From Mobula birostris (Eukaryota), in assembly GCF_030028105.1 (NCBI RefSeq), contig NC_092373.1:37663770-37727769 (forward strand): 64,000 nucleotides of DNA, given 5' to 3'. Within the stretch, counting starts at the first letter, position 1; each line of letters starts with the position of its first letter. Under the pieces are notes generated by a model that was not told the origin of the DNA, searched no databases, and was given only the letters and a program-made list of their open reading frames with translations. This document shows positions 4,701 to 63,440 of this stretch, in pieces. The position numbers were made by a program, and so were the translations under genes.

Positions 4701-6749
4701 CTGGAGATGAAAAATGTGAGATTTTCATTTGCAGTAAAAAAAATTCAGTAGCACTCAGGGTTTTCAAAATCTTTACAATTTTAAGGAATATAATTTATAA
4801 TTTAAAATTTTGTTGATATATGGAATATCATCTGGTACACTACACACTTTAACAATGTGACAATGCCACATGTATTTTACAGACATAAAATCATTTAAGA
4901 CAGAACTGTAAGACTCTTATTAACTTGTCCTCTAGTCCCAATGAAAGGTCTCAGCCCAAAACGTCAACTGTACTCTTTCCCATAGATGCTGCCTAGCCTG
5001 CTGAGTTCCTCCAGCATTTTGTGTGTGTTGCTTGGATTTCCAGCATCTGCAGATTTTCTCTTGTTTGTGATTGGACTCTTATAACTTGTTTGAACTGAAA
5101 TACAGTGGTGCAATCAACACTTAAAGCTGTGTGGACCATTGAGTTTGAAGAGTCAATTTATACAATAAATAAACTTAAATGATAAAGAGAGGATAAGGGT
5201 GAAGATAAATTATGAGATTCCACTCCTACAAAATGCACTACTGAGATATGTGATGTTACCTGTTTGAATAGGCAAGGTGGTACCCATGGAACTATTCTAC
5301 ATCAGGCAGCACTGCCTGAGGGGTAGGGGAAAACTGCAGATGCATCAAAAATAGTTTGGAATTGGTGTGTATCTACTTAACATGTCACAGTTTATATGCA
5401 TTCAATAATCACAGCATCGTTGGATAAAATTAACTACACAGCAGAGATTTGTGTCAAGGGTTTACTGCAAATTAAACTGATAATTATCAGTGTGAGAACT
5501 GCAACTCATGAGGTTTGTAATTATAAAATAGAAAGTGTTGTAAAGGCTCACAGGCAGGTAGCTACTCTGGAGAGAAACAGAGGTAACAATTTGTTCAAAA
5601 GATAGAAATAAAACTAACTTTAAATTCCTGACAAATGGGGAGAGGCAGAGGAAATAAAAGGGAAGCTAAAGTCTACTTTTAATTTTATAGTATGGATACC
5701 AAAATTGTACAAAAGTGATGTGAGGAACATAATTGTACTGTACTTTTCATTTTCAGACATGCACAAAGTTAAAATAGACTATTTCTAGACAACTATCTTT
5801 TGACTAATCACAGATAACTATATGATTAACATGAAGGAATATTGTGTTAATTATTTTAATGTGCTAACTATACCTATTGATGATGGAATGCTGCGAGATC
5901 ACTAACTAGGGAAACAAGTTTTGATAAAGAGAGGAAGAGGAGGGAGTGGGGGAAAGATGGAAAGGATGGGTAGATATATACATTCTATTGATGTTTGACA
6001 GGAGAAATTGATATTTGTTCTACTTTGCAAGACTTTTACATGACTCCCTTTGACTCCAGATCTCTGGGTTCTGAGGTGATTGAAAAACCCGTCTGGAAAC
6101 CACAGACACTCCACAAGTGGAGCTGGAGTTTCCAGATGGATGGTGGGGGGACCGGTCATTTTAGGGTTGGTTTTCTTCTTCTGCCCTTTGTGTTGGATGT
6201 TTGTGTTTTCCTAATGCATTGAGCTGGGTTTTCAATAGCACCCTTAGTGTTCATGGTCCACTTTGAATGACTTCCAGGTGTCACTGGGGTTGTTGCATTT
6301 TTCAAGGAAGCTTTGAAAACATGTTTTTTTCCCTCTCTCTCTGTCTAACTGTTATAGGTATTCCAAATCTCAGACATGGGTATAAAGGCAAAAGTAGAAA
6401 TTGATTTTGTATCAGGCTTGAGGCACTAATCTTCAAACAGCCAAAGGTCATGCTTGATAGCTGAAGGTTGTGCTGAATTTCTTCACTGACATTAGCTTTT
6501 GTAGAGGGATGGCTCCAGAGACAGAATAAACACACAAAATGCTGGAAATACTCAGCAGATCAGGCTGCATCTATCGAACGAGAAACAGCAATAATATTTC
6601 AGGTCTAAGAATTAACATTTCAAACCAAAACATTAACTCAATTTCTCTTCTCGCAGATGTAGCCTGAACTGCTATTTCCCACACTTTCTGCTTTACTTTA
6701 GATTTCCAGCGTCTGCAGTTCATTTTTTATTTTAAATTTAGAAATATTA

Positions 6750-8870: not shown

Positions 8871-9829
8871 TTTAATGTGAGGAACAGCAGCAGCCATTGT
8901 AACTTAGCAAGACCAAGGCTGGGTGATGGGTCAAAAGTTCAAGTGGAATGGTGATATCTAAATCAGTGCAGCTCTCACTCACTGATTAATCTGCTAGAGA
9001 AGCAGCCTAGATTATGTACACAAGCCATAGGGTAATACTTGAACCTACAATATTATCTGAGCCGTGCAGGAAGAATCCCAGGCCTCTGTGTAGAATTAAT
9101 ATACAAACTGTGCTCTGGGCTAACAAGATAAAGGTTGCCAGCATCATAAACTACTGTGGATCTGCCAAATTCAAGTTTTGGAGGATCATATTCAGCACTG
9201 GGGTTGGAGGGACTTTCAAACACTCATCATCACACATGACACTTGGGAGCCACTGCAACTCCAAAGGAAATAACGTTTGGATCAGAACTTTTCTTCAGGA
9301 AGTCAAAATGACCTCTTTCACCAAATATTGTACCTGATACGGCAAGAAATTAAACAGTTAACAATGTTTAGAGGCAAATAAGCTGATAAGGTAACAGAAA
9401 CTGAATATCGCTACCATGGGTTGCTGGGTGGTGTGCTGCAGAACAGCCTGTCCCATGCTTTATCTAAAAAACTGAGGGCAACTCCAATACCAGAGATTAC
9501 TTCACATCCGCACAATGATCCATTGGCAACGACAACTTCTTTAATATTTGTTTTACCTTTTAAAGTGATGCTTTCTCCTACAACTTACAAAGTACGTGTA
9601 AAGTCCAACATAGGGACAACTACACAAACCAGCAAAGCCCCTGTTAAAATCCCTAGTCTGTGCCACAATTACTCTTAAACCTTTGGGTTATGGGAGATAC
9701 ATACGCACATCTCTCATAGCTCATTCTTCAGTGATCTTCCAGTGTCCGTGCTTTATTGACAAACACAAGCAGGATTTGGATTCCAGGGAAAACCTCCTGA
9801 CCATATCACAATCACAGGATGATTACAAC

Positions 9830-27746: not shown

Positions 27747-28258
27747 ACCTCTGGTGGGGGAACATGTCGCATCCTTTTCAAGGTGGTTAGTCCACCTTTG
27801 GTCCCCACCTGGCACTCAGCTCTCACCTGTGGCTCTTCGTAGCTGTTTGCATGCGACAGCGGCCACACCCCGGGCAACGGCTTCAACAAGTCGGCTAAAC
27901 CAGGTGAGGGTAGCCGACGGGTCTCAAACCCTCGGTGAGATAGGGGGTTGTCTATCGCAGGATGCGAAGATAGACTCCGGCTGATTGAGCAGACGAGACC
28001 AATGGAAGGTCCAATGGTCAAGAAGGCGGTCTCTGTGGAGCACGACAAGACACAGAAGATGTTCTGGTCATCCACTGTGCCTAGTCCCATCTCCAGCCAT
28101 CTCGACTCTGTCTTGCCACTAGATCCAGATGGGAATTGGGAAGACAGAGTGAGGCTGATGCTGCACAACTCTCCCTCACTTAAATCCAAATCATGCACTA
28201 GTCTTGACACCATCAATGGCGTTGAGGTCTTCATCAACAACAACGATGGACGAACAAC
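27747..28258 (+). mobile_element. Related ~510-bp non-coding retroelement, slightly 5'-truncated
   Basis: Imperfect TSD ATGTATGT (27739-27746) / ATGTACGT (28259-28266), a (CAA)-rich tail, and the same ribozyme-like 5' region as 62117-62591. Confidence 0.7.
27822..27908 (+). ncRNA. HDV-like ribozyme core lacking the 5' strand of P1
   Basis: P2 CUCACCUG/CAGGUGAG; P3 GGC/GCC; L3 UCUUCGU; P1 3' strand ACACCCC followed by GG; P4 CGGCUU/AAGUCG; GCUAA with C27895. Confidence 0.6.
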
Positions 28259-38757: not shown

Positions 38758-40975
38758 CAGTGGATTCTGATTAATTGGGCCATTGGTTAATTGGCGCGGC
38801 AGTTTATTCGGGGCAATACTTAACAACAACTAATTAAGAAAATAACCAGGATTCCCTTTGTTTATTTGGGACACTATGTCACTAAATTGGGAGAGGAGGC
38901 TGTTGCCAAACAGTTTCTAACCTATGTCAGGTGCTTGCATTTGGGTAGCCGATAGTTTTAAATAGCATCAATTGCGTGTATTTGTGTTCAAAAAGCAGTG
39001 ATTTTTTTGTCTGTGACGGGTGGCAAGAAATAAGCAGTAAGACAATTCAGAGCTGTTTTGCTCACTGTGGTTTCAAGCATTCAGACTTGGAGATGCCAGA
39101 CATGAGAAAGTCTGCAGATGCTGGAAATCCAAAGCAACACACACAAAATGCTGAAGGAACTCTGCAGGTCAGGCAGCATCGATGGAAAAGAGTAAACAGT
39201 CAACATTTTCAGACCACAGCCCTTCTTCAGGACTGGAAAGGAAGGGGAGAAGTCAGAGTAACAGGTGGGGGGAGGGGAGGAAGAAGTACAACGTGGTAGG
39301 TGATAGGTGGAACTGAGGGGGGGGGTGAAGTAAAGAGTTGGGATGTTGATTGGTGAAAAAGGTAAAGGGCTGGAGAAGAGTTATTCTGACAGGAGAAATT
39401 AGAACATGGAAGGGGGGGAGTACTTAGAGGAAAGAGATGGGTGAGAGAGGGTAAAGGGAATATTGAAGGGAGGGGGGCAATTACCAGAAGTTGGAGAAAT
39501 CGATATTCATGCCATCAAGTTGGAGACTACCCAGAAGGAATATAAGATGTCGCTTCTCCAATTTGAGTGTGACCTCATCATGGCATTAGAGGAAGCCATG
39601 GACTGACATATCGGAATGGGAATGGGAAGTGGAATTGAAATGGGTGGCTCAAGGGAGATCTCACTTTTTCTGGTAGGTGCTTGGTGAAGCAGCTTCCAAT
39701 CTAAGTTGGGTCTCACAGATATACAGGAGGCCACACCTGGAGAACTGGATTTAGTACATGACCCCAACAGACCTGCAGGTGAAGTTTTGCCTCACATGGA
39801 AGGATTGTTTGGTGCTCTGAATGGTAGTGAGGGAGGAGGTGTAGGGGCAGGAGTGGCACTTGTTCCACTTGCAAGGGTAAGTGCCAAGAGGTAGTTCAGT
39901 GGGGAGGGACGAGTAGAAGAGGGAGTCGCATTGGGAACGATTCCTGTGGAAAGCGGAAAGTGGGAAGTGAGTTGGTGAGGGGGGGATCCTGTTGGAGATG
40001 GAACAAGTTACGGAGAATTATGTGCTGGATGCAGAAGGCTAGAGGTATGCAGATATGAGTTCAGTGGGGCAGGAACAAGCAGAAGCAATGGGTCTACCTG
40101 GACAGGCAAGTTTAATGGATTTTGGGTAGGAGGCTGAAATGGGAGGAGAGGGGTTAGGGAACTATTAGGTTGGTGGCAGTGGATGGGAGATCTCCAGAGT
40201 TGGTAAGGTTGGGATGGTGTGGGAGACAATGACCTGGTGCTCCTTAGTGGGTCCTGTTCAAGGGGTAAATAACAGGAGGTTTCTGAGAATTGTCACCTGG
40301 CCTCAGCAAGACTTGTCAGTCTACCAGACTTCTGGAGCACCATCCTTTATCTGTGGTTTGATGGTGAGGTTAGGATTGGTGCGGAGAGAGTGAAGAGCAG
40401 TGCGCTCAGAAGGAGTGAGGTTAGATTTGAAGAAAGGAGTGCTACAGTCAGGATGGTTGTTGTCTCATTGGCAGTTAGCAATAAAAAAAGATCTAGAGCA
40501 GGCAGAAGACCAGAGTGGTATGTCTAGAAAGATGGGAGAAACAGCTGAATGAAAATGAATTTCAAGAAGTTAGGAACTACGGAGAATTTGAAGGTATCAA
40601 CAGTCATCTTGAATGTTACAATGAAAGTGAAGATTTGGAGGATGCAATTGTCAAAAACAATTGTATGAAGGCAGTCCGTTATCTGCACGAAGTGTCTGCA
40701 CTATTCATTTACAGTCAATCAAAAGAACATGGCAGTGTACACCAGATGAATTCCTCTGATAACTGTATTAGGAAGTAATACAGTTTTGTAGTTTTGCAGT
40801 AGTATTGGTGGTATAATCTGATGTGTATTTCACTTAAATACATAATTTGTTACTCAGTTAAATGGTAGTTTGTCTTTTTTATGCCTGTTAACTATTTCCA
40901 TAAAACTTTGGCTAATTGCAGTAGCCACTTAATTGGGCCAAAATGGGCTGGTCCCAATGTGTTCCAATTAACCAT
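38758..40975 (+). mobile_element. pogo/Tigger-like DNA transposon remnant split by a Penelope-like insertion
   Basis: TA-CAGTGGATTCTGATTAATTGGG start; WQEISSKTIQSCFAHCGF (pogo C-terminal W...TI..CF..GF motif). A related copy in opposite orientation lies at ~61890-62690. Confidence 0.6.
39105..40530 (-). mobile_element. Decayed Penelope-like element inserted into a pogo/Tigger remnant
   Basis: Homologous to the 12-13 kb element (ttaccagaagttggagaaatcgatattcatgcc...) with frameshifts. The same terminal repeat is at 39105-39240. Confidence 0.8.
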
Positions 40976-43954: not shown

Positions 43955-45526
43955 CAAACCCCATTTCCAGAAAATTTGGGATATTTTCCAAAATACAATG
44001 AAAACAAAAATCTGATATGTTAATTCACGTGAACCTTTATTTAACTGACAAAAGTACAAAGAAAAGATTTTCAATAGTTTTACTAACCAACTTATTTTTT
44101 GTAAATATGCACAAATTTAGAATTTGATGGCTGCAACACACTCAACAAAAGTTGGGACAGAGTTAAAATAAGATTGAAAAGTGCACAGAATATTCAAGTA
44201 ACACCGGTTTGGAAGACTCCACATTAAGCAGGCTAATTGGTAGCAGGTGAGGTATCATGACTGGGTATAAAAGTAGCGTCCATCAAAGGCTCAGTCTTTG
44301 CAAGCAAGGATGGGTCGTGGCTCACCCCTTTGTGCCAAAATTCGTGAGAGAATTGTTAGTCGGTTCAAAACGAACATTTCTCAACGCAAGATTGCAGAGA
44401 ATTTAGGTCTTTCAACATCAACAGTACATAATATTGTGAAAAGATTCAGAGAATTCAGAGACATCTCAGTGCGTAAGGGGCAAGGTCGGAAACGACTGTT
44501 GAATGCGCGTGATCTTCGAGCCCTCAGGCGGCACTGCCTAAGAAACCGTCATGCTACTGTGACAATTATAGCCACCTGGGCTCGGGAGTACTTCGGAAAA
44601 CCATTGTCACTCAACGCAGTCCGTTGCTGCATCCAGAAATGCAACTTGAAACTGTATTACGCAAGGAGGAAGCCATACATCAACTCTATGCAGAAACGCC
44701 GGTGAGTTCTCTGGGCCTGAGCTCATCTCAGATGGACCGAAAGACTGTGGAACTGTGTGCTGTGGTCAGATGAGTCCACATTTCAGCTAGTTTTCGGAAA
44801 AAACGGGCGTCGAGTTCTCCGTGCCAAAGATGAAAACGACCATCCAGATTGTTATCAGCGAAAGGTGCAAAAGCCAGCATCTGTGATGGTATGGGGGTGC
44901 ATCAGTGCCCACGGCATGGGTCAGTTGCTTGTATGTGAAGGTACCATTGACTCTGAGGTGTATATTAGGATTTTAGAGAGACATATGTTGCCATCAAGGC
45001 GACGTCTCTTCCCGGGACGTCCATGCTTATTTCAGCAGGACAATGCCAGACCACATTCTGCATGGGCTACAACAGCGTGGCTTTGTAGACACAGGGTGCG
45101 TGTGCTTGACTGGCCTGCTGCCAGTCCAGATCTATCTCCTATTGAAAATGTACGGTGCATCATGAAGAGGAGAATGGAGACCACGGATTGTTGAGCAGCT
45201 GAAGTCTTATATCAAGCAAGAATGGACAAAATTTCCAATTGCAAATCTACTACAATTAGTATCCTCAGTTCCAAAAGGATTAAAAGGTGATGTACCACAA
45301 TGGTAAGCATGCCTCTGTCCCAACTTTTGTTGAGTGTGTTGCAGCCATCAAATTCTAAATTTGTGTATGTTTACCAAATACAATCAAGTTGGTCAGTAAA
45401 ACTATTGAAAATCTTTTCTTTGTACTTCTGTCAGTTAAATAAAGGTTCACATGAATTAACATATCACAGATTTTTGTTCTTATTGCATTTTGGAAAATAT
45501 CCCAACTTTTCTGGAAATGAGGTTTG
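43955..45526 (+). mobile_element. Full-length Tc1 (DD34E) DNA transposon with long IR/DR-type TIRs, inactivated
   Basis: TA TSD on both sides. TIRs of ~210 bp (43955-44162, 45313-45526) contain internal direct repeats AAAA(T/G)TTGGGA. TATAAAA at ~44266. Confidence 0.96.
44310..45306 (+). pseudogene. Tc1 transposase pseudogene
   Basis: HTH region, GRKR linker, [14 protein letters not shown] and SPDLSPIE, with 34 residues between the second D and E. In-frame TGA at 44703 and 44718; frameshifting deletion near 45175. Confidence 0.93.
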
Positions 45527-58784: not shown

Positions 58785-58800
58785 ATGATTACCTCGGCCG
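58785..58800 (+). CDS. PSMD1: PSMD1 (Rpn2) first coding exon, MITSA(A); later exons not seen in the window
   Basis: caacATGATTACCTCGGCCG|GTGAGT in a CpG island. MITSA is the recalled PSMD1 N-terminus, and the gene is syntenic with C2orf72. Confidence 0.88.
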
Positions 58801-59102
58801 GTGAGTAAGGCTGCTCGAGTTCGCCCCTTCTCCCTGTTCGGTGCCCGGCTGAGCCTGAAGATGCTGCCGGCTGGTTTGAGATCTGCGTGACCGTTAATAC
58901 AATAAGAGAAGGCTAGAAATCCTCGACAGCATTCTCTTATTATCTGGAGAGCTACACATACACACGAAAAACAGGTTGATGTTGCATCTTGTGAACTGGT
59001 CAGTTGTTGCTTTGTGCGCTTGATAGCCTGCGCCCGCACAGGCCTAGAAAACCTCACTTTGGCTCGTTTGGAGGTGTTAAATATTCGCTAGTAGTTGCCT
59101 GG

Positions 59103-61185: not shown

Positions 61186-62116
61186 CTTAATTAGTCCTGA
61201 TCTTTATAGAAGGTGACACAGACTTTGAAGGGCGAGTTGTCTCGTCTTGATATTACTGTGTGAGTAAGGTGATGGTATTTTTTTTGTCCAGAGTTGCTGA
61301 GAAAACAAGATATAATAAAAGGAAACTGAAGTTTTTGCTGTTCTCAAAACTATCAGCTTTGACTTGGAAGAAGTTTATTATGCATGATTTTATGCTGGAT
61401 AGGTAGTTTGATTAGAATTCTTGTTGTGTCATAGAAATTGATGCCGTAGAAGGAAACCATTCAGCCCATCGTGTTCATGTTGGCTAAAAATGGGCCTAAT
61501 CCCATTTCCCAGCTTCTGGTTCATAGTCTTATAGGTTATGGTTCTTAAAGCTGTCATTCAAGTAGTGATGATTTCTTTCATCATCTTTTCAGGCATTGAG
61601 TTCCTGGCTTATTGAGTAGCACTCTGGTTATTAGACTGAAAGCAGATAGCAGGACTGAACAGATTGTTCTTGGGCCTCAGCTATTTGCAATTTTTGTCAA
61701 CAATTTGGCTGAGGTGACCAAATGCGATTTCCCCCCCCCCCCCCAGATTTCCTGTTGCTATTAACCTAAGTGGGATTATTAATGCAGAGGTGTGTTTAAA
61801 GAGCATCAAGGTGATATGGGCAGGATCTGTAAGAATGTGGCAAATGGAATACAACGTGGAGGAATACAAGGTCATTTATTTTGATGTACCATGGATTCCA
61901 GTTAACTGGAACACATTGGGACCTGCTGCTGGCCCAAGTAGCCAAAGTTTCATGGAAATAGTTGAAAGGGTATAAGTAAAGGCAAACTACTGTTTAACTG
62001 AGTAGCGAATTATGTAGTTAAATGAAATACAGAACAAATTGGAACACCAACAATACTACTGCGGTACTATACTACTGTTATCGACAGAGGAATACATTGT
62101 GTGTACGCTGCCGTGT

Positions 62117-62591
62117 GGGGGGTGTCCAGGGAGGCACATCAGGAGGAGGAGTTGTCTTGCCCATTCTGGAGTTGCTCACTCACCCTTGGTTCCCACCAAG
62201 ACACTCAGCTCTCATCTGTGGCTCCCAAGTAGTTGTTTGTATGCGACAGTGGCCGCACTCCGGTGCACCTTTTCAGCAGTCAGGCTAAATCAGGTGAGGA
62301 TTCATACCCCAGTAAAATATGTCCGAGCATGTGAAATCGGCTGTGGCAGACTGGATGGATACAATGAATAGTGAGATCCAATGGCCAAGAAGGTGGTTCT
62401 GCAGCACTTTGCGGAGAATGAAGCCATGATAAGGCACAAAAGTAGTCATGGCTATCCACTGTAACCAAGAAAACCACTGGATCCAGACTTCTGAGGTCAG
62501 AAGAGTGGAACTGTCCCCTTGTAATGGCTTTTCCACTTTATAAACTCCTTCACAGGTTTCACTGTCATGGGACACGACAGATAACCAACGT
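62117..62591 (+). mobile_element. Non-coding ~475-bp retroelement (probably RTE-mobilised) starting with an HDV-like ribozyme fold
   Basis: 10-bp TSD GCTGCCGTGT at 62107-62116 and 62592-62601. Homologous to 27747-28258. Confidence 0.75.
62119..62298 (+). ncRNA. Candidate HDV-like self-cleaving ribozyme
   Basis: P1 GGGGUGU(62119)/GCACUCC(62255); P2 CUCAUCUG(62211)/CAGGUGAG(62291); P3 GGC/GCC; P1.1 CC/GG; J4/2 GCUAA with C62285. Confidence 0.6.
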
Positions 62592-62689
62592 GCTGCCGTG
62601 TTCCTTTTGTTTGACTGTAAATGAACAAAATTAGCGCAGACACATAATGCAGATAATGGATTGCTTTCATACAACGCTTTTACAATCCG

Positions 62690-63440
62690 AATCAGGTTGT
62701 TTTGTGGCAACAATACATTGCAATAGATGATAATAAAAACTCTCAGAAAGAAGTATGTATAAAAAAATTAAGTAAGTAGTGCAAAGTAAGAGAGAAATAT
62801 AGTGAAGTAGTGTTCCATGAGTTCATTGTCCATTTAGAAATCTGATGCTGGAAGGGAAGAAGTCTGAAGTATTGAGTGTGTGAATTCAGGCTCCTGTATT
62901 TCCCACTTGATGGTAGCAATGAAAAGAGAGCATGTCATATGTGATGGGGGTCTTTGATAATGGATGCTGCCTTTTTGAGGCATCACCTTTTAACGGTGTC
63001 CTCAGTGCTGGGAAAGCTATTGCCCATGATGGCGTTGGCAGAATTTACAACTTTCTGCAGCCTTTTCTGATCCTGTGCCGTGGTCCCTCTGTACCAGATG
63101 GTGATGCAACTTGTTAGAATGCTCTCCACTGTACATCTCTAGAAATTTGAGAGAATCTTTAGTGACATACCAAGTCTCTTCAAACTCCTAATGAAAAATA
63201 GCTGCTGTTGTGCCTTCTTTGTAATTGCATCAACATGTTGGGCCCAGGATAGATCTCCAGAGATGATGACACTCAGGAACTTGAAACTGCTTATTCTTTC
63301 CACTGCTGATCCCTCATTGACTTCCCCTTCCTGAAGTCGACAGCTGCTCCTTGATCTTACTGACGCTGAGTGCAAGGTTCTTGTTGTGGCACCAGCCGAC
63401 CAGCTGATCTGTCTTGTTCCTGTACACCACCTTGTCACTG
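62690..63440 (-). mobile_element. Rex1/Babar-type LINE 3' part
   Basis: AVERISSFKFL.V.IS.DLSWAQHVDAITKKAQQ.LFFIRSLKRLG. Confidence 0.8.

What the first reader, a model, noticed from the sequence alone, without database searches (positions are those of the whole stretch)
62107..62601. TSD-flanked non-coding retroelement whose 5' end is an HDV-like ribozyme with an extra hairpin in L3
Seen: a 10-bp TSD (GCTGCCGTGT) brackets a ~475-bp element with no recognisable retroelement ORF. Its first ~180 nt contain the HDV nested double-pseudoknot strands in the correct order: P1 GGGGUGU/GCACUCC, a long J1/2, P2 CUCAUCUG/CAGGUGAG, P3 GGC/GCC, P1.1 CC/GG, a P4 region, and J4/2 GCUAA (the antigenomic HDV J4/2 sequence, with candidate catalytic C62285). 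The predicted cleavage site G62119 is only 2 nt from the TSD-defined 5' end. Established: R2 and RTE retrotransposons use HDV-like ribozymes to cut their 5' ends, and R2 has short non-autonomous derivatives that keep the ribozyme. Unusual: a ~19-nt hairpin (GYUGUU...GACAGY) is inserted at the 3' side of L3, at the HDV C26/U27 position that is extruded and dispensable, so standard descriptors would miss it. Inference: a promoter-less SINE-like family that releases itself from host transcripts (here sense to PSMD1 intron 1) by self-cleavage. This copy's L3 (UCCCAAGU) and P4 look decayed.
Basis: partly seen in the sequence, partly recalled or inferred. Interest (0 to 1): 0.85.

Follow-up and report, generated by a model that had tools for sequence, protein, structure and literature searches.

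The report
Ribozyme-headed short LINE deletion copy
A 475-base jumping-gene remnant in a ray gene intron begins with a fold like the self-cutting hepatitis-delta RNA, inherited from a parent LINE; such elements are known, but this lineage has an unusual extra hairpin in the catalytic loop, and this copy looks worn out.

Summary
Window 62117-62591 is a real 475-bp insertion. Its 10-bp duplication is matched by an uninterrupted paralogue of the host repeat at 40727-40758 and by many family contigs that lack the insert.

The P1 heptamer starts 2 nt inside the element's 5' end (chance about 7e-4).

A metagenome contig (L003) carries an intact APE+RT LINE headed by the same fold, with the same L3 hairpin. 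It passes a strict descriptor that 0 of 400 shuffles of the window pass. Copy A's interior matches that LINE's 5' UTR and ORF1 start, and its last 15 nt resemble the LINE's tail. It is therefore a SIDE-like, internally deleted, non-coding derivative.

Limits:
- No Rfam HDV model matches.
- With four sequences there is one compensatory pair (in P4) and no significant covariation.
- J1/2 has no conserved structure.
- Cleavage is untested.
- Copy A has a deviant L3, a broken P4 and two wobbles in P1. A second species shares it, so it is old and probably inert.

The scan has already flagged this family many times elsewhere in this genome. Verdict: a known kind of element, with a new structural variant of the ribozyme (the L3 hairpin).

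The parts
62107..62116 (+). 5' copy of the 10-bp target-site duplication
   Evidence: Present once in the paralogous empty site at 40727-40758 and in host-family contigs.
62117..62118 (+). Two extra G between the duplication and P1. Read as untemplated or microhomology bases at the 5' junction (inference).
   Evidence: P1 cannot extend to them, because the facing bases are the G-G of J1/4.
62119..62125 (+). P1 5' strand (GGGGUGU). The predicted cut is 5' of G62119.
   Evidence: Identical to the heptamer heading the L003 LINE (7/7).
62126..62210 (+). Long J1/2 linker (85 nt), poorly conserved.
   Evidence: 39-49% pairwise identity against 66-85% in the core. No conserved structure.
62211..62218 (+). 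P2 5' strand
   Evidence: Pairs with 62291-62298.
62220..62222 (+). P3 5' strand (GGC)
   Evidence: Invariant in 4/4 sequences.
62223..62231 (+). 5' part of L3, including the P1.1 cytosines 62224-62225. One base longer than in copy B, L003 and L004, and lacks their C-G at the recalled C24-G25 place.
62232..62250 (+). Extra hairpin inside L3: 5-bp stem (62232-36 / 62246-50) and 9-nt loop.
   Evidence: All cells with letters pair; 2 of 5 pairs change on one side (G-C/G-U, C-G/U-G). Family contigs read C at 62233 and 62240.
62252..62254 (+). P3 3' strand (GCC)
62255..62261 (+). P1 3' strand. Here it makes two wobbles with P1 5'. Most family contigs read A at 62255 and C at 62259, which gives a fully Watson-Crick P1.
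62262..62263 (+). G-G of J1/4 (3' side of P1.1)
   Evidence: helix 4: 4/4 sequences pair.
62268..62283 (+). P4 region. It is a 6-bp stem with a tetraloop in B, L003 and L004. In this copy only 3 of 6 positions pair.
   Evidence: for the stem in B, L003 and L004. The 3 of 6 for this copy is my own reading of A4.
62285..62290 (+). J4/2, with the candidate catalytic C62285.
   Evidence: The block G-G-C-U-A-A-A is invariant in 4/4 sequences.
62291..62298 (+). P2 3' strand
62327..62461 (+). Remnant of the LINE 5' UTR and the first codons of ORF1.
   Evidence: Local alignment to L003 5186-5323, 91/127 identical.
62473..62591 (+). 3' module ending in the LINE-type tip (62575-62589). Upstream of 62473, 78 family contigs continue with unrelated sequence. 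This is the candidate internal-deletion joint.
   Evidence: loose end 'before 62473', agreement 0.7. (last 15 nt: 11/15 to the L003 tip, 10/15 to copy B).
62592..62601 (+). 3' copy of the target-site duplication
27749..28258 (+). Copy B: second, 5'-truncated copy. It lacks the P1 5' strand and has a better-kept L3, P4 and P1 3' strand. It is flanked by a 6-bp repeat only.
40727..40758 (-). Paralogous empty site of the host repeat

Best explanation
Window 62117-62591 is an old, fixed copy of a short non-coding retroelement. The element arose from an APE+RT LINE by internal deletion. It keeps three things: the LINE's 5' head, a stump of 5' UTR and ORF1, and about 120 nt of 3' end.

The head encodes an HDV-type nested double pseudoknot (P1, long J1/2, P2, P3, L3, P1.1, P4, J4/2 with a conserved C). 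It differs from classic HDV-like ribozymes by a 5-bp hairpin inserted in the 3' half of L3.

Inferred mechanism. The element is read through from a host or upstream promoter. The head cuts the RNA 5' of the first G of P1, which gives the element RNA its defined 5' end. The LINE's protein, supplied in trans, recognises the shared 3' tip and copies the RNA into a new site by target-primed reverse transcription. That leaves a variable duplication (10 bp here) and a few extra 5' bases.

What is shown: the insertion, the fold's strands, homology to a LINE head, and the loss of coding capacity.

What is inferred: catalysis, read-through transcription, and mobilisation in trans.

This particular copy is most likely inert. 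Its L3 deviates from the motif kept in the other three sequences, P4 is broken, and P1 has two wobbles.
For: 1. Real insertion: a paralogous empty site and many family contigs without the insert.

2. The fold sits exactly at the terminus. The only heptamer in 62000-62204 able to pair with 62255-62261 starts at 62119, 2 nt inside the element (p about 7e-4).

3. Homologues in other organisms. L003 carries the same head directly upstream of ORF1 (110 aa) and an intact 1090-aa ORF2 with Exo_endo_phos and RVT_1. That head passes a strict descriptor (7-bp P1 starting with G, 8-bp P2, 3-bp P3, L3 U-C-Y-N-C-G, G-G, C in J4/2). None of 400 dinucleotide shuffles of the window passes it on either strand.

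4. Conservation pattern. The core is 66-85% identical between sequences and J1/2 only 39-49%, yet the terminal heptamer is identical in A and L003. That is what a long-range P1 predicts.

5. Family contigs read A at 62255 (30 contigs in X1, 31 in X5) and C at 62259 (23 and 23). This makes P1 seven Watson-Crick pairs, as in copy B and L003.

6. Pair counts: 92.7% of 123 cells pair, against 38-52% when partners are slid by 1-3 columns. There is one compensatory pair in P4.

7. The pseudoknot-free minimum-energy fold of the L003 head contains P2, P3, the L3 hairpin and P4 (z = -2.1).

8. Copy A 62327-62461 aligns to the L003 5' UTR and ORF1 start (91/127). The 3' 15-mers match 11/15 (A) and 12/15 (B) to the L003 tip.

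9. Precedent from passages I read. R2 SIDEs keep only the ribozyme and 3' UTR; R2 ribozymes can have J1/2 of 216-498 nt and no P4 (PMC3774820). RTE and baggins elements carry HDV-like ribozymes and lack promoters (PMC6765202).
Against: - No Rfam HDV-family model matches A, B, L003 or L004, even at E <= 10.
- Covariation is not significant with four sequences. P1, P2, P3 and the hairpin never change on both sides, and 108 of 500 shuffles reach the observed covariation score. The structure was drawn from these same sequences, which favours it over the slid controls.
- J1/2 shows no conserved helix. PMC4908430 (passages) reports that long-J1/2 ribozymes gain almost three orders of magnitude in rate from a structured J1/2 domain.
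- Copy A's own fold is no more stable than its shuffles (z = -0.07).
- In L003 the 5' heptamer can also pair with a conserved block just before P2. That is a competing helix.
- The DNA 5' end is 2 nt upstream of the predicted cut.
- L003 has the heptamer twice, and the 5' borders of L003 and L004 are undefined.
- The partner LINE of the ray itself was not seen in this window.
- Cleavage has never been assayed.
Confidence: 0.75

Rival explanations
1. The conserved head is a LINE 5' UTR element with another job (internal promoter, translation-initiation platform, binding site for the element's protein). It only resembles the HDV fold and does not cut itself.
For: - No Rfam HDV hit.
- No significant covariation.
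- Unstructured J1/2.
- A competing helix for the 5' heptamer.
- A large insertion in the catalytic loop, which I did not find described for active HDV-like ribozymes (one search found 3 papers holding the terms and listed 2; neither is on this by title or abstract start).
Against: All HDV parts are present in the right order and spacing. L003 passes a strict descriptor that 0 of 400 shuffles pass. The J4/2 block with its C, the P1.1 partners and the L3 motif are conserved across sequences that differ by 50-60% in J1/2. P1 links the very first bases of the element to the core. These other roles also do not exclude cleavage: HDV-like heads of R2 and L1Tc are proposed to act as IRES as well (PMC6765202).
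Confidence: 0.15
2. Copy A is still an active ribozyme and cuts the host gene's intron-1 RNA wherever the gene is transcribed.
For: The element lies sense in the intron. P1, P2, P3, P1.1 and the J4/2 C can all still form. P4 is dispensable in some HDV-like ribozymes (PMC3774820).
Against: - L3 is one base longer and lacks the C-G kept in B, L003 and L004.
- P4 pairs at 3 of 6 positions (my reading of A4).
- P1 has two wobbles where most family contigs have Watson-Crick pairs.
- The insertion is shared by a second species with about 2% difference (records 29 and 30), so it has been decaying for a long time.
Confidence: 0.08
3. The element is an ordinary pol III SINE, or a plain 5'-truncated LINE fragment, and the fold is a coincidence.
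For: It is short, non-coding and TSD-flanked. The relaxed descriptor hits 28 of 100 shuffles.
Against: - No tRNA.
- No 5S, 7SL or tRNA match at E <= 10.
- No A-tail or tandem repeat.
- The element has both the LINE's 5' head and its 3' tip, so it is not a 5' truncation.
- The head is conserved in a second window copy and in two contigs from elsewhere.
Confidence: 0.02

Closest known systems
R2 SIDEs (short internally deleted elements of R2; Eickbush & Eickbush 2012. Seen as cited and described in passages of PMC3774820, and as an abstract start)
   Same: Non-autonomous derivative made by internal deletion. It keeps only the HDV-like ribozyme head and the 3' end that the parent's protein recognises. 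It is processed from a co-transcript.
   Different: R2 and its SIDEs insert site-specifically in 28S rDNA. This family inserts in dispersed sites (here inside another repeat in a gene intron) with a 10-bp duplication. The parent is an APE-type LINE, not the R2 restriction-like-endonuclease type. L3 carries a hairpin.
L1Tc / NARTc and the Pr77 hallmark of the trypanosomatid ingi clade (PMC3185411 and PMC4035085: abstract starts only; PMC6765202: passages)
   Same: An HDV-like ribozyme in the first bases of a dispersed APE+RT LINE, shared with non-autonomous relatives. It releases the element from longer transcripts.
   Different: Pr77 is a compact 77-nt ribozyme that also serves as a promoter. 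The head here is about 180-190 nt, with an 85-100-nt J1/2 and an L3 hairpin. Hosts are animals, not kinetoplastids.
HDV-like ribozymes of RTE and baggins LINEs, and the mosquito drz-Agam-2 type with a long J1/2 (PMC6765202; PMC4908430. The primary paper, Ruminski et al. 2011, PMC3308841, is not held)
   Same: Ribozyme at the exact 5' end of promoter-less LINEs that sit in introns. A long insert between P1 and P2.
   Different: In drz-Agam-2 the J1/2 insert forms a stabilising helix (P1.2). No conserved J1/2 helix is detectable here. I found no L3 insertion described. Whether the present LINE belongs to the RTE clade was not testable.
Genomic and antigenomic HDV ribozymes and CPEB3 (Rfam HDV-type models; details of their loops are recalled)
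   Same: Same order of strands, 7-bp P1 opening with G, 3-bp G/C P3, a U-C-Y-N-C-G start of L3, two-pair P1.1, a 4-nt spacer before P4, and a C followed by A-rich J4/2 before P2.
   Different: No significant score against any Rfam model. L3 is 26-29 nt with an internal hairpin instead of 7-8 nt. J1/2 is far longer.

Membership tests
HDV-like self-cleaving ribozyme (fold class) | Nested double pseudoknot with strands in the order P1-P2-P3-L3-P3'-P1'-P1.1-P4-J4/2-P2' | tested here: met
   A relaxed descriptor finds exactly this site in the window. A strict descriptor is met by the L003 head, with 0 of 400 shuffles passing.
HDV-like self-cleaving ribozyme (fold class) | 7-bp P1 whose first base is the G 3' of the cut, at the 5' end of the processed RNA | tested here: met
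   P1 is 62119-25 with 62255-61 (5 WC + 2 GU), 2 nt from the TSD-defined end. It is 7 WC pairs in L003.
HDV-like self-cleaving ribozyme (fold class) | Short L3 with conserved U-C-C..C-G and a two-pair P1.1 to J1/4 | tested here: inconclusive
   P1.1 pairs in 4/4 sequences. The L3 motif is present in B, L003 and L004 but not in copy A. In all four, L3 is interrupted by a 5-bp hairpin, which the classic definition does not allow.
HDV-like self-cleaving ribozyme (fold class) | Catalytic C at the start of J4/2 | tested here: met
   C62285 lies in a block invariant in 4/4 sequences. Its role is inferred.
HDV-like self-cleaving ribozyme (fold class) | Helices supported by compensatory changes | tested here: inconclusive
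   With 4 sequences, 1 of 33 pairs changes on both sides (in P4). The shuffle control reaches the observed covariation score in 108 of 500 shuffles.
HDV-like self-cleaving ribozyme (fold class) | Match to a curated HDV-type covariance model | tested here: not met
   No HDV-type family at E <= 10 on 61500-63200, L003 or L004, and none at gathering score in the whole window.
HDV-like self-cleaving ribozyme (fold class) | Mg-dependent site-specific self-cleavage abolished by mutating the C | not testable with these tools
   This is a bench assay.
SIDE-like internally deleted non-autonomous LINE derivative | 5' end homologous to the 5' end of an autonomous LINE | tested here: met
   The head and the following 135 nt align to L003, upstream of its ORF1 and ORF2. 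L003 comes from another organism.
SIDE-like internally deleted non-autonomous LINE derivative | 3' end shared with the LINE | tested here: inconclusive
   The terminal 15-mer is 11/15 (A) and 12/15 (B) identical to the L003 tip. Seventy-eight family contigs share 62473 onward but differ upstream. The ray's own LINE was not seen.
SIDE-like internally deleted non-autonomous LINE derivative | Loss of the reverse-transcriptase ORF | tested here: met
   The element is 475 bp, and the + strand has no ORF over 36 aa inside it. Only the first codons of ORF1 remain.
SIDE-like internally deleted non-autonomous LINE derivative | Retroposition footprint: target-site duplication and an empty site | tested here: met
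RTE clade of LINEs | RT-domain phylogeny placing ORF2 with RTE reference elements | not testable with these tools
No reference LINE library is on hand. Pfam shows only APE + RVT_1. The named relatives are uncharacterised proteins of Branchiostoma and a catfish.
pol III SINE (tRNA, 5S or 7SL head) | Head derived from a pol III gene with internal promoter boxes | tested here: not met
   ARAGORN finds no tRNA. Rfam shows no tRNA, 5S or 7SL match at E <= 10.

The most novel reading that the evidence does not exclude
The L3 hairpin marks a distinct, catalytically active and so far undescribed subclass of HDV-like ribozymes. It heads a widespread animal LINE lineage (ORF2 relatives at 50-74% identity on many contigs, including amphioxus and catfish) and is invisible to current covariance models and descriptors. 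The loop's invariant 6-nt palindrome is functional. It could act as a kissing contact between two element RNAs, or pair with the conserved block that lies about 30-50 nt downstream of P2.
Probability: 0.3. Interest if true: 0.6.

Novelty: new variant of a known kind. Interest (0 to 1): 0.42.

Why it matters
The core of HDV-like ribozymes is thought to tolerate length changes only in J1/2 and P4. A natural, conserved hairpin inside the catalytic loop L3 would widen that definition. It would also explain why descriptor and covariance-model searches miss whole LINE lineages, and it would offer a new insertion site for engineered switches.

For genome annotation, it gives a defined 5' boundary for an abundant ray repeat family and links short non-coding copies to their LINE parent.

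For this locus nothing functional is expected. The copy is old, shared between two species and degraded.

Tried and rejected
Approaches that gave nothing or were uninformative:
- Rfam at permissive thresholds gave only chance lncRNA-type matches and nothing at gathering score.
- A relaxed HDV descriptor proved too permissive to serve as evidence (0.3 hits per shuffle). I replaced it with a strict one.
- nhmmer with each copy and with a two-copy profile found no third copy in the window.
- Terminal inverted repeats that would suggest a DNA transposon: none at the ends.
- tRNA head: none. Tail repeats: none.
- J1/2 consensus folding: nothing conserved.
- Copy B's flanks have no paralogous empty site in the window.

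Attempts to collect more copies for covariation:
- The metagenome scan gave 4 loci, of which 2 are true.
- The viral-contig scans gave 8, 0 and 1 loci, all chance (checked).
- The search for related loci with ORF2 in viral contigs found none.
- My genome contigs pattern was too loose.
- The search for homologous proteins gave 1734 ORF2 relatives at E <= 1e-50 among the 8000 candidates scored.

Things I did not do:
- I did not test whether removing the hairpin lets an Rfam model score, because that needs a changed sequence.
- I did not determine the LINE clade.
- I did not build a covariance model.
- I did not ask for any supplementary file. Figure S2 of PMC3774820 (18 further R2 ribozyme drawings) and the unheld Ruminski et al. 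2011 could show L3 variants that I cannot exclude.
- The claim that an L3 hairpin is not in print rests only on searches and the passages read.
Full report
THE OBSERVATION

The 10-mer stands at 62107-62116 and at 62592-62601. On its own that means little, because the window has 76 exact 10-mer direct repeats 100-600 bp apart.

What makes it a target-site duplication is an empty site. A blastn of 62000-62750 against the window showed that both flanks match one other repeat copy, at 40647-40855 on the minus strand. The left-flank match ends at 40727 and the right-flank match begins at 40735, so the two overlap by about the length of the 10-mer. Aligned, that paralogue runs through the site with the 10-mer present once.

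Laying Logan contigs of two DNA runs and two possible RNA runs at 80% likeness gave the same answer at family scale:
- Contigs of the very abundant host repeat skip from 62038-62115 to 62604-62612. Fifteen joints are listed and 244 more are not shown.
- The consensus of the loose ends before 62604 (119 contigs in X1, 86 in X5, 15 in X13) ends in the letters of 62101-62116.

So 62117-62591 (475 bp) is a true insertion.

Contigs of a second organism (run X5) bridge both junctions with 8 and 4 differing letters (records 29 and 30). The insertion therefore predates the split of the two species.

THE FOLD IN COPY A

- P1: 62119-25 with 62255-61 (two G-U pairs).
- P2: 62211-18 with 62291-98.
- P3: 62220-22 with 62252-54.
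- P1.1: C62224/5 with G62263/2.
- A 5-bp hairpin: 62232-36 with 62246-50, inside L3.
- C62285: opens J4/2.

My relaxed descriptor found this site and no other on either strand of the window. The same descriptor hits dinucleotide shuffles 0.3 times per window, and 28 of 100 shuffles have a hit. The match alone is therefore not evidence.

The evidence is positional. Only four heptamers can pair with 62255-61 using at most two wobbles. Between 62000 and 62204 one occurs only at 62119. The chance of one within the first three bases of an independently defined element is 7e-4.

Two G (62117-18) lie between the duplication and P1. I read them as junction additions, which is inference.

RELATIVES

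The window holds one more copy, at 27749-28258. It lacks about the first 22 nt and so has no P1 5' strand. Its P1 3' strand is the perfect complement of copy A's 5' heptamer.

Family contigs agree with this. They read A at 62255 (30 contigs in X1, 31 in X5) and C at 62259 (23 and 23). They also read C at 62233 and 62240, in the hairpin stem and loop. That table shows 40 rows and leaves 66 unshown, so silence at other places means nothing.

One scan of metagenome contigs, with a gapped pattern of the P3/hairpin region, returned four loci. Two are GC-rich bacterial chance hits. Two (L003, L004) are clear homologues.

L003 is decisive. The head at 4950-5140 is followed by:
- a 110-aa ORF1;
- an intact 1090-aa ORF2 with Exo_endo_phos and RVT_1 domains;
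- a roughly 60-nt tail ending at 9063.

L004 is a decayed copy of a similar LINE.

The L003 head passes a strict descriptor: P1 of 7 bp opening with G, P2 of 8 bp, P3 of 3 Watson-Crick pairs, L3 starting U-C-Y-N-C-G (a motif I recalled from HDV), G-G, and a C before P2. None of 400 shuffles of the window passes it. Copy A fails on L3, copy B fails for lack of the 5' strand, and L004 fails through decay.

HOW WELL THE STRUCTURE IS SUPPORTED

On the four-sequence alignment, 92.7% of 123 cells pair, against 38-52% when the 3' partners are slid. The structure came from these sequences, however, which favours it.

Only one pair changes on both sides (P4, C-G to G-C). P1, P2, P3, P1.1 and the hairpin are invariant or change on one side, keeping a wobble. 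The shuffle control is not significant (108 of 500 for the covariation score).

Points that do speak for the fold:
- The core (P2 to P2') is 66-85% identical between sequences and J1/2 only 39-49%. Yet the terminal heptamer is 7/7 identical in A and L003.
- P4 is a 6-bp stem with a tetraloop in B, L003 and L004.
- The pseudoknot-free minimum-energy fold of the L003 head contains P2, P3, the hairpin and P4 (z = -2.1).

Points against it:
- No Rfam HDV-type model scores on any of the four, even at E <= 10.
- J1/2 has no conserved helix. Long-J1/2 ribozymes are reported to depend on one for speed (PMC4908430, passages).
- Copy A folds no better than its shuffles.
- In L003 the 5' heptamer can alternatively pair with a conserved block just before P2.

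WHAT THE ELEMENT IS

Copy A 62327-62461 aligns with L003 5186-5323, the LINE's 5' UTR and first ORF1 codons (91/127). After that the homology stops.

From 62473 onward, 78 family contigs match while carrying unrelated sequence upstream. I take this as the internal-deletion joint with the 3' end of a longer relative.

The last 15 nt of A and B match the L003 tip at 11/15 and 12/15.

There is no tRNA, no tail repeat and no ORF over 36 aa on the + strand inside the element.

This is the anatomy of a short internally deleted element: LINE head, stump and LINE tip. The ray's own full LINE is not in this window. Earlier scan notes say it exists and call it RTE. I could not test the clade.

MECHANISM

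Inferred from the anatomy and from passages read in PMC3774820 and PMC6765202:
1. Read-through transcription from a host or upstream promoter.
2. Self-cleavage 5' of the P1 guanine.
3. Recognition of the 3' tip by the LINE protein in trans.
4. Target-primed reverse transcription, with a variable duplication.

Copy A lies in sense about 3.3 kb downstream of a + strand first exon (ATG 58786, six codons, donor at 58802). That this gene is PSMD1 is my recall of how that protein starts, not a test.

Copy A itself is probably dead. Its L3 is one base longer and lacks the conserved C-G. P4 pairs at 3 of 6 positions (my reading of A4). P1 has two wobbles where the family has none. The copy is also old enough to be shared by two species.

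COMPARISON AND NOVELTY

Ribozyme-headed LINEs (R2, RTE, baggins, L1Tc) and their non-autonomous derivatives (SIDEs, NARTc) are established. So are very long J1/2 and missing P4.

What I did not find described is a hairpin inside L3. This rests on searches. Ruminski et al. 2011 is not held, and I did not ask for supplements. The hairpin is present in all four sequences from at least three sources, and the 6-nt loop palindrome is kept in three of the four and in the majority of family contigs at copy A's deviating position. It is thus a lineage feature, not damage.

The scan has flagged this family many times on other DNA of the same genome. A word search found 49 notes holding 'HDV ribozyme', and follow-ups s1-145255, s1-145075 and s1-145449 reached the same kind of verdict.
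- the empty-site proof for this copy;
- the null models;
- homologues outside the genome, with an intact LINE;
- the P4 redefinition;
- the honest failure of the covariation test.

VERDICT

A well-supported member of a known kind of element, carrying a new structural variant of the HDV-like fold. The copy at hand is a fossil. Interest is moderate.

Noticed in passing
window 62237-62245; 27847-27855; L003 about 5079-5085; L004 (same column block in A4): The loop of the L3 hairpin holds a 6-nt palindrome (G-C-A-U-G-C) in B, L003 and L004. Copy A differs at 62240, where most family contigs read the palindrome's letter. Flanking loop bases vary. A conserved self-complementary loop could make a kissing contact between two RNAs.
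   Followed up: partly
window 62327-62338; L003 5186-5199; L004 (homologous block about 330-345): A conserved 12-14-nt block 30-50 nt downstream of P2 begins with five or six bases complementary to the hairpin-loop palindrome. This may be a long-range pairing. Not tested.
   Followed up: no
L003 4951-4956 with 5044-5049; window 62201-62207: The 5' heptamer can also pair with a conserved block (G-C-A-C-U-C) just upstream of P2. The pseudoknot-free fold of L003 uses that helix to close the J1/2 domain. It could be a competing or regulatory alternative to P1.
   Followed up: partly
L003 4941-4956: The P1 heptamer occurs twice, 9 nt apart, at the head of the intact LINE, and both satisfy the strict descriptor. 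L003 and L004 also share 4-5 similar bases just before P1, so their true 5' borders are unclear.
   Followed up: no
L003 5141-5165; window 27911-27940; L004 about 285-310: A hairpin directly after P2 is kept in structure but not in sequence in B, L003 and L004. It is largely deleted in copy A (read by eye).
   Followed up: no
window 61977-62116 and 62592-62735; paralogue 40647-40855: The repeat that hosts the insertion is extremely abundant in both DNA runs and is also present in the possible RNA runs. The window holds at least one more copy.
   Followed up: partly
window 58786-58803: A first coding exon on the + strand: ATG, six codons (MITSAG), then a GTGAGT donor, inside a G+C-rich stretch.
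   Followed up: partly
window 44298-45194: Two adjacent + strand ORFs with Sleeping-Beauty-type HTH domains and a DDE_3 domain. This is a Tc1/mariner-type transposase remnant.
   Followed up: partly
L003 326-4744 (minus strand): Upstream of the LINE lies a run of long minus-strand ORFs (275, 402, 193, 250 aa, among others) that look like another retroelement. Not searched.
   Followed up: no
window 62225-62370: Some family contigs join 62225 directly to 62370 (2 contigs each in X1, X5 and X14). A subfamily may lack the 3' half of the ribozyme.
   Followed up: no
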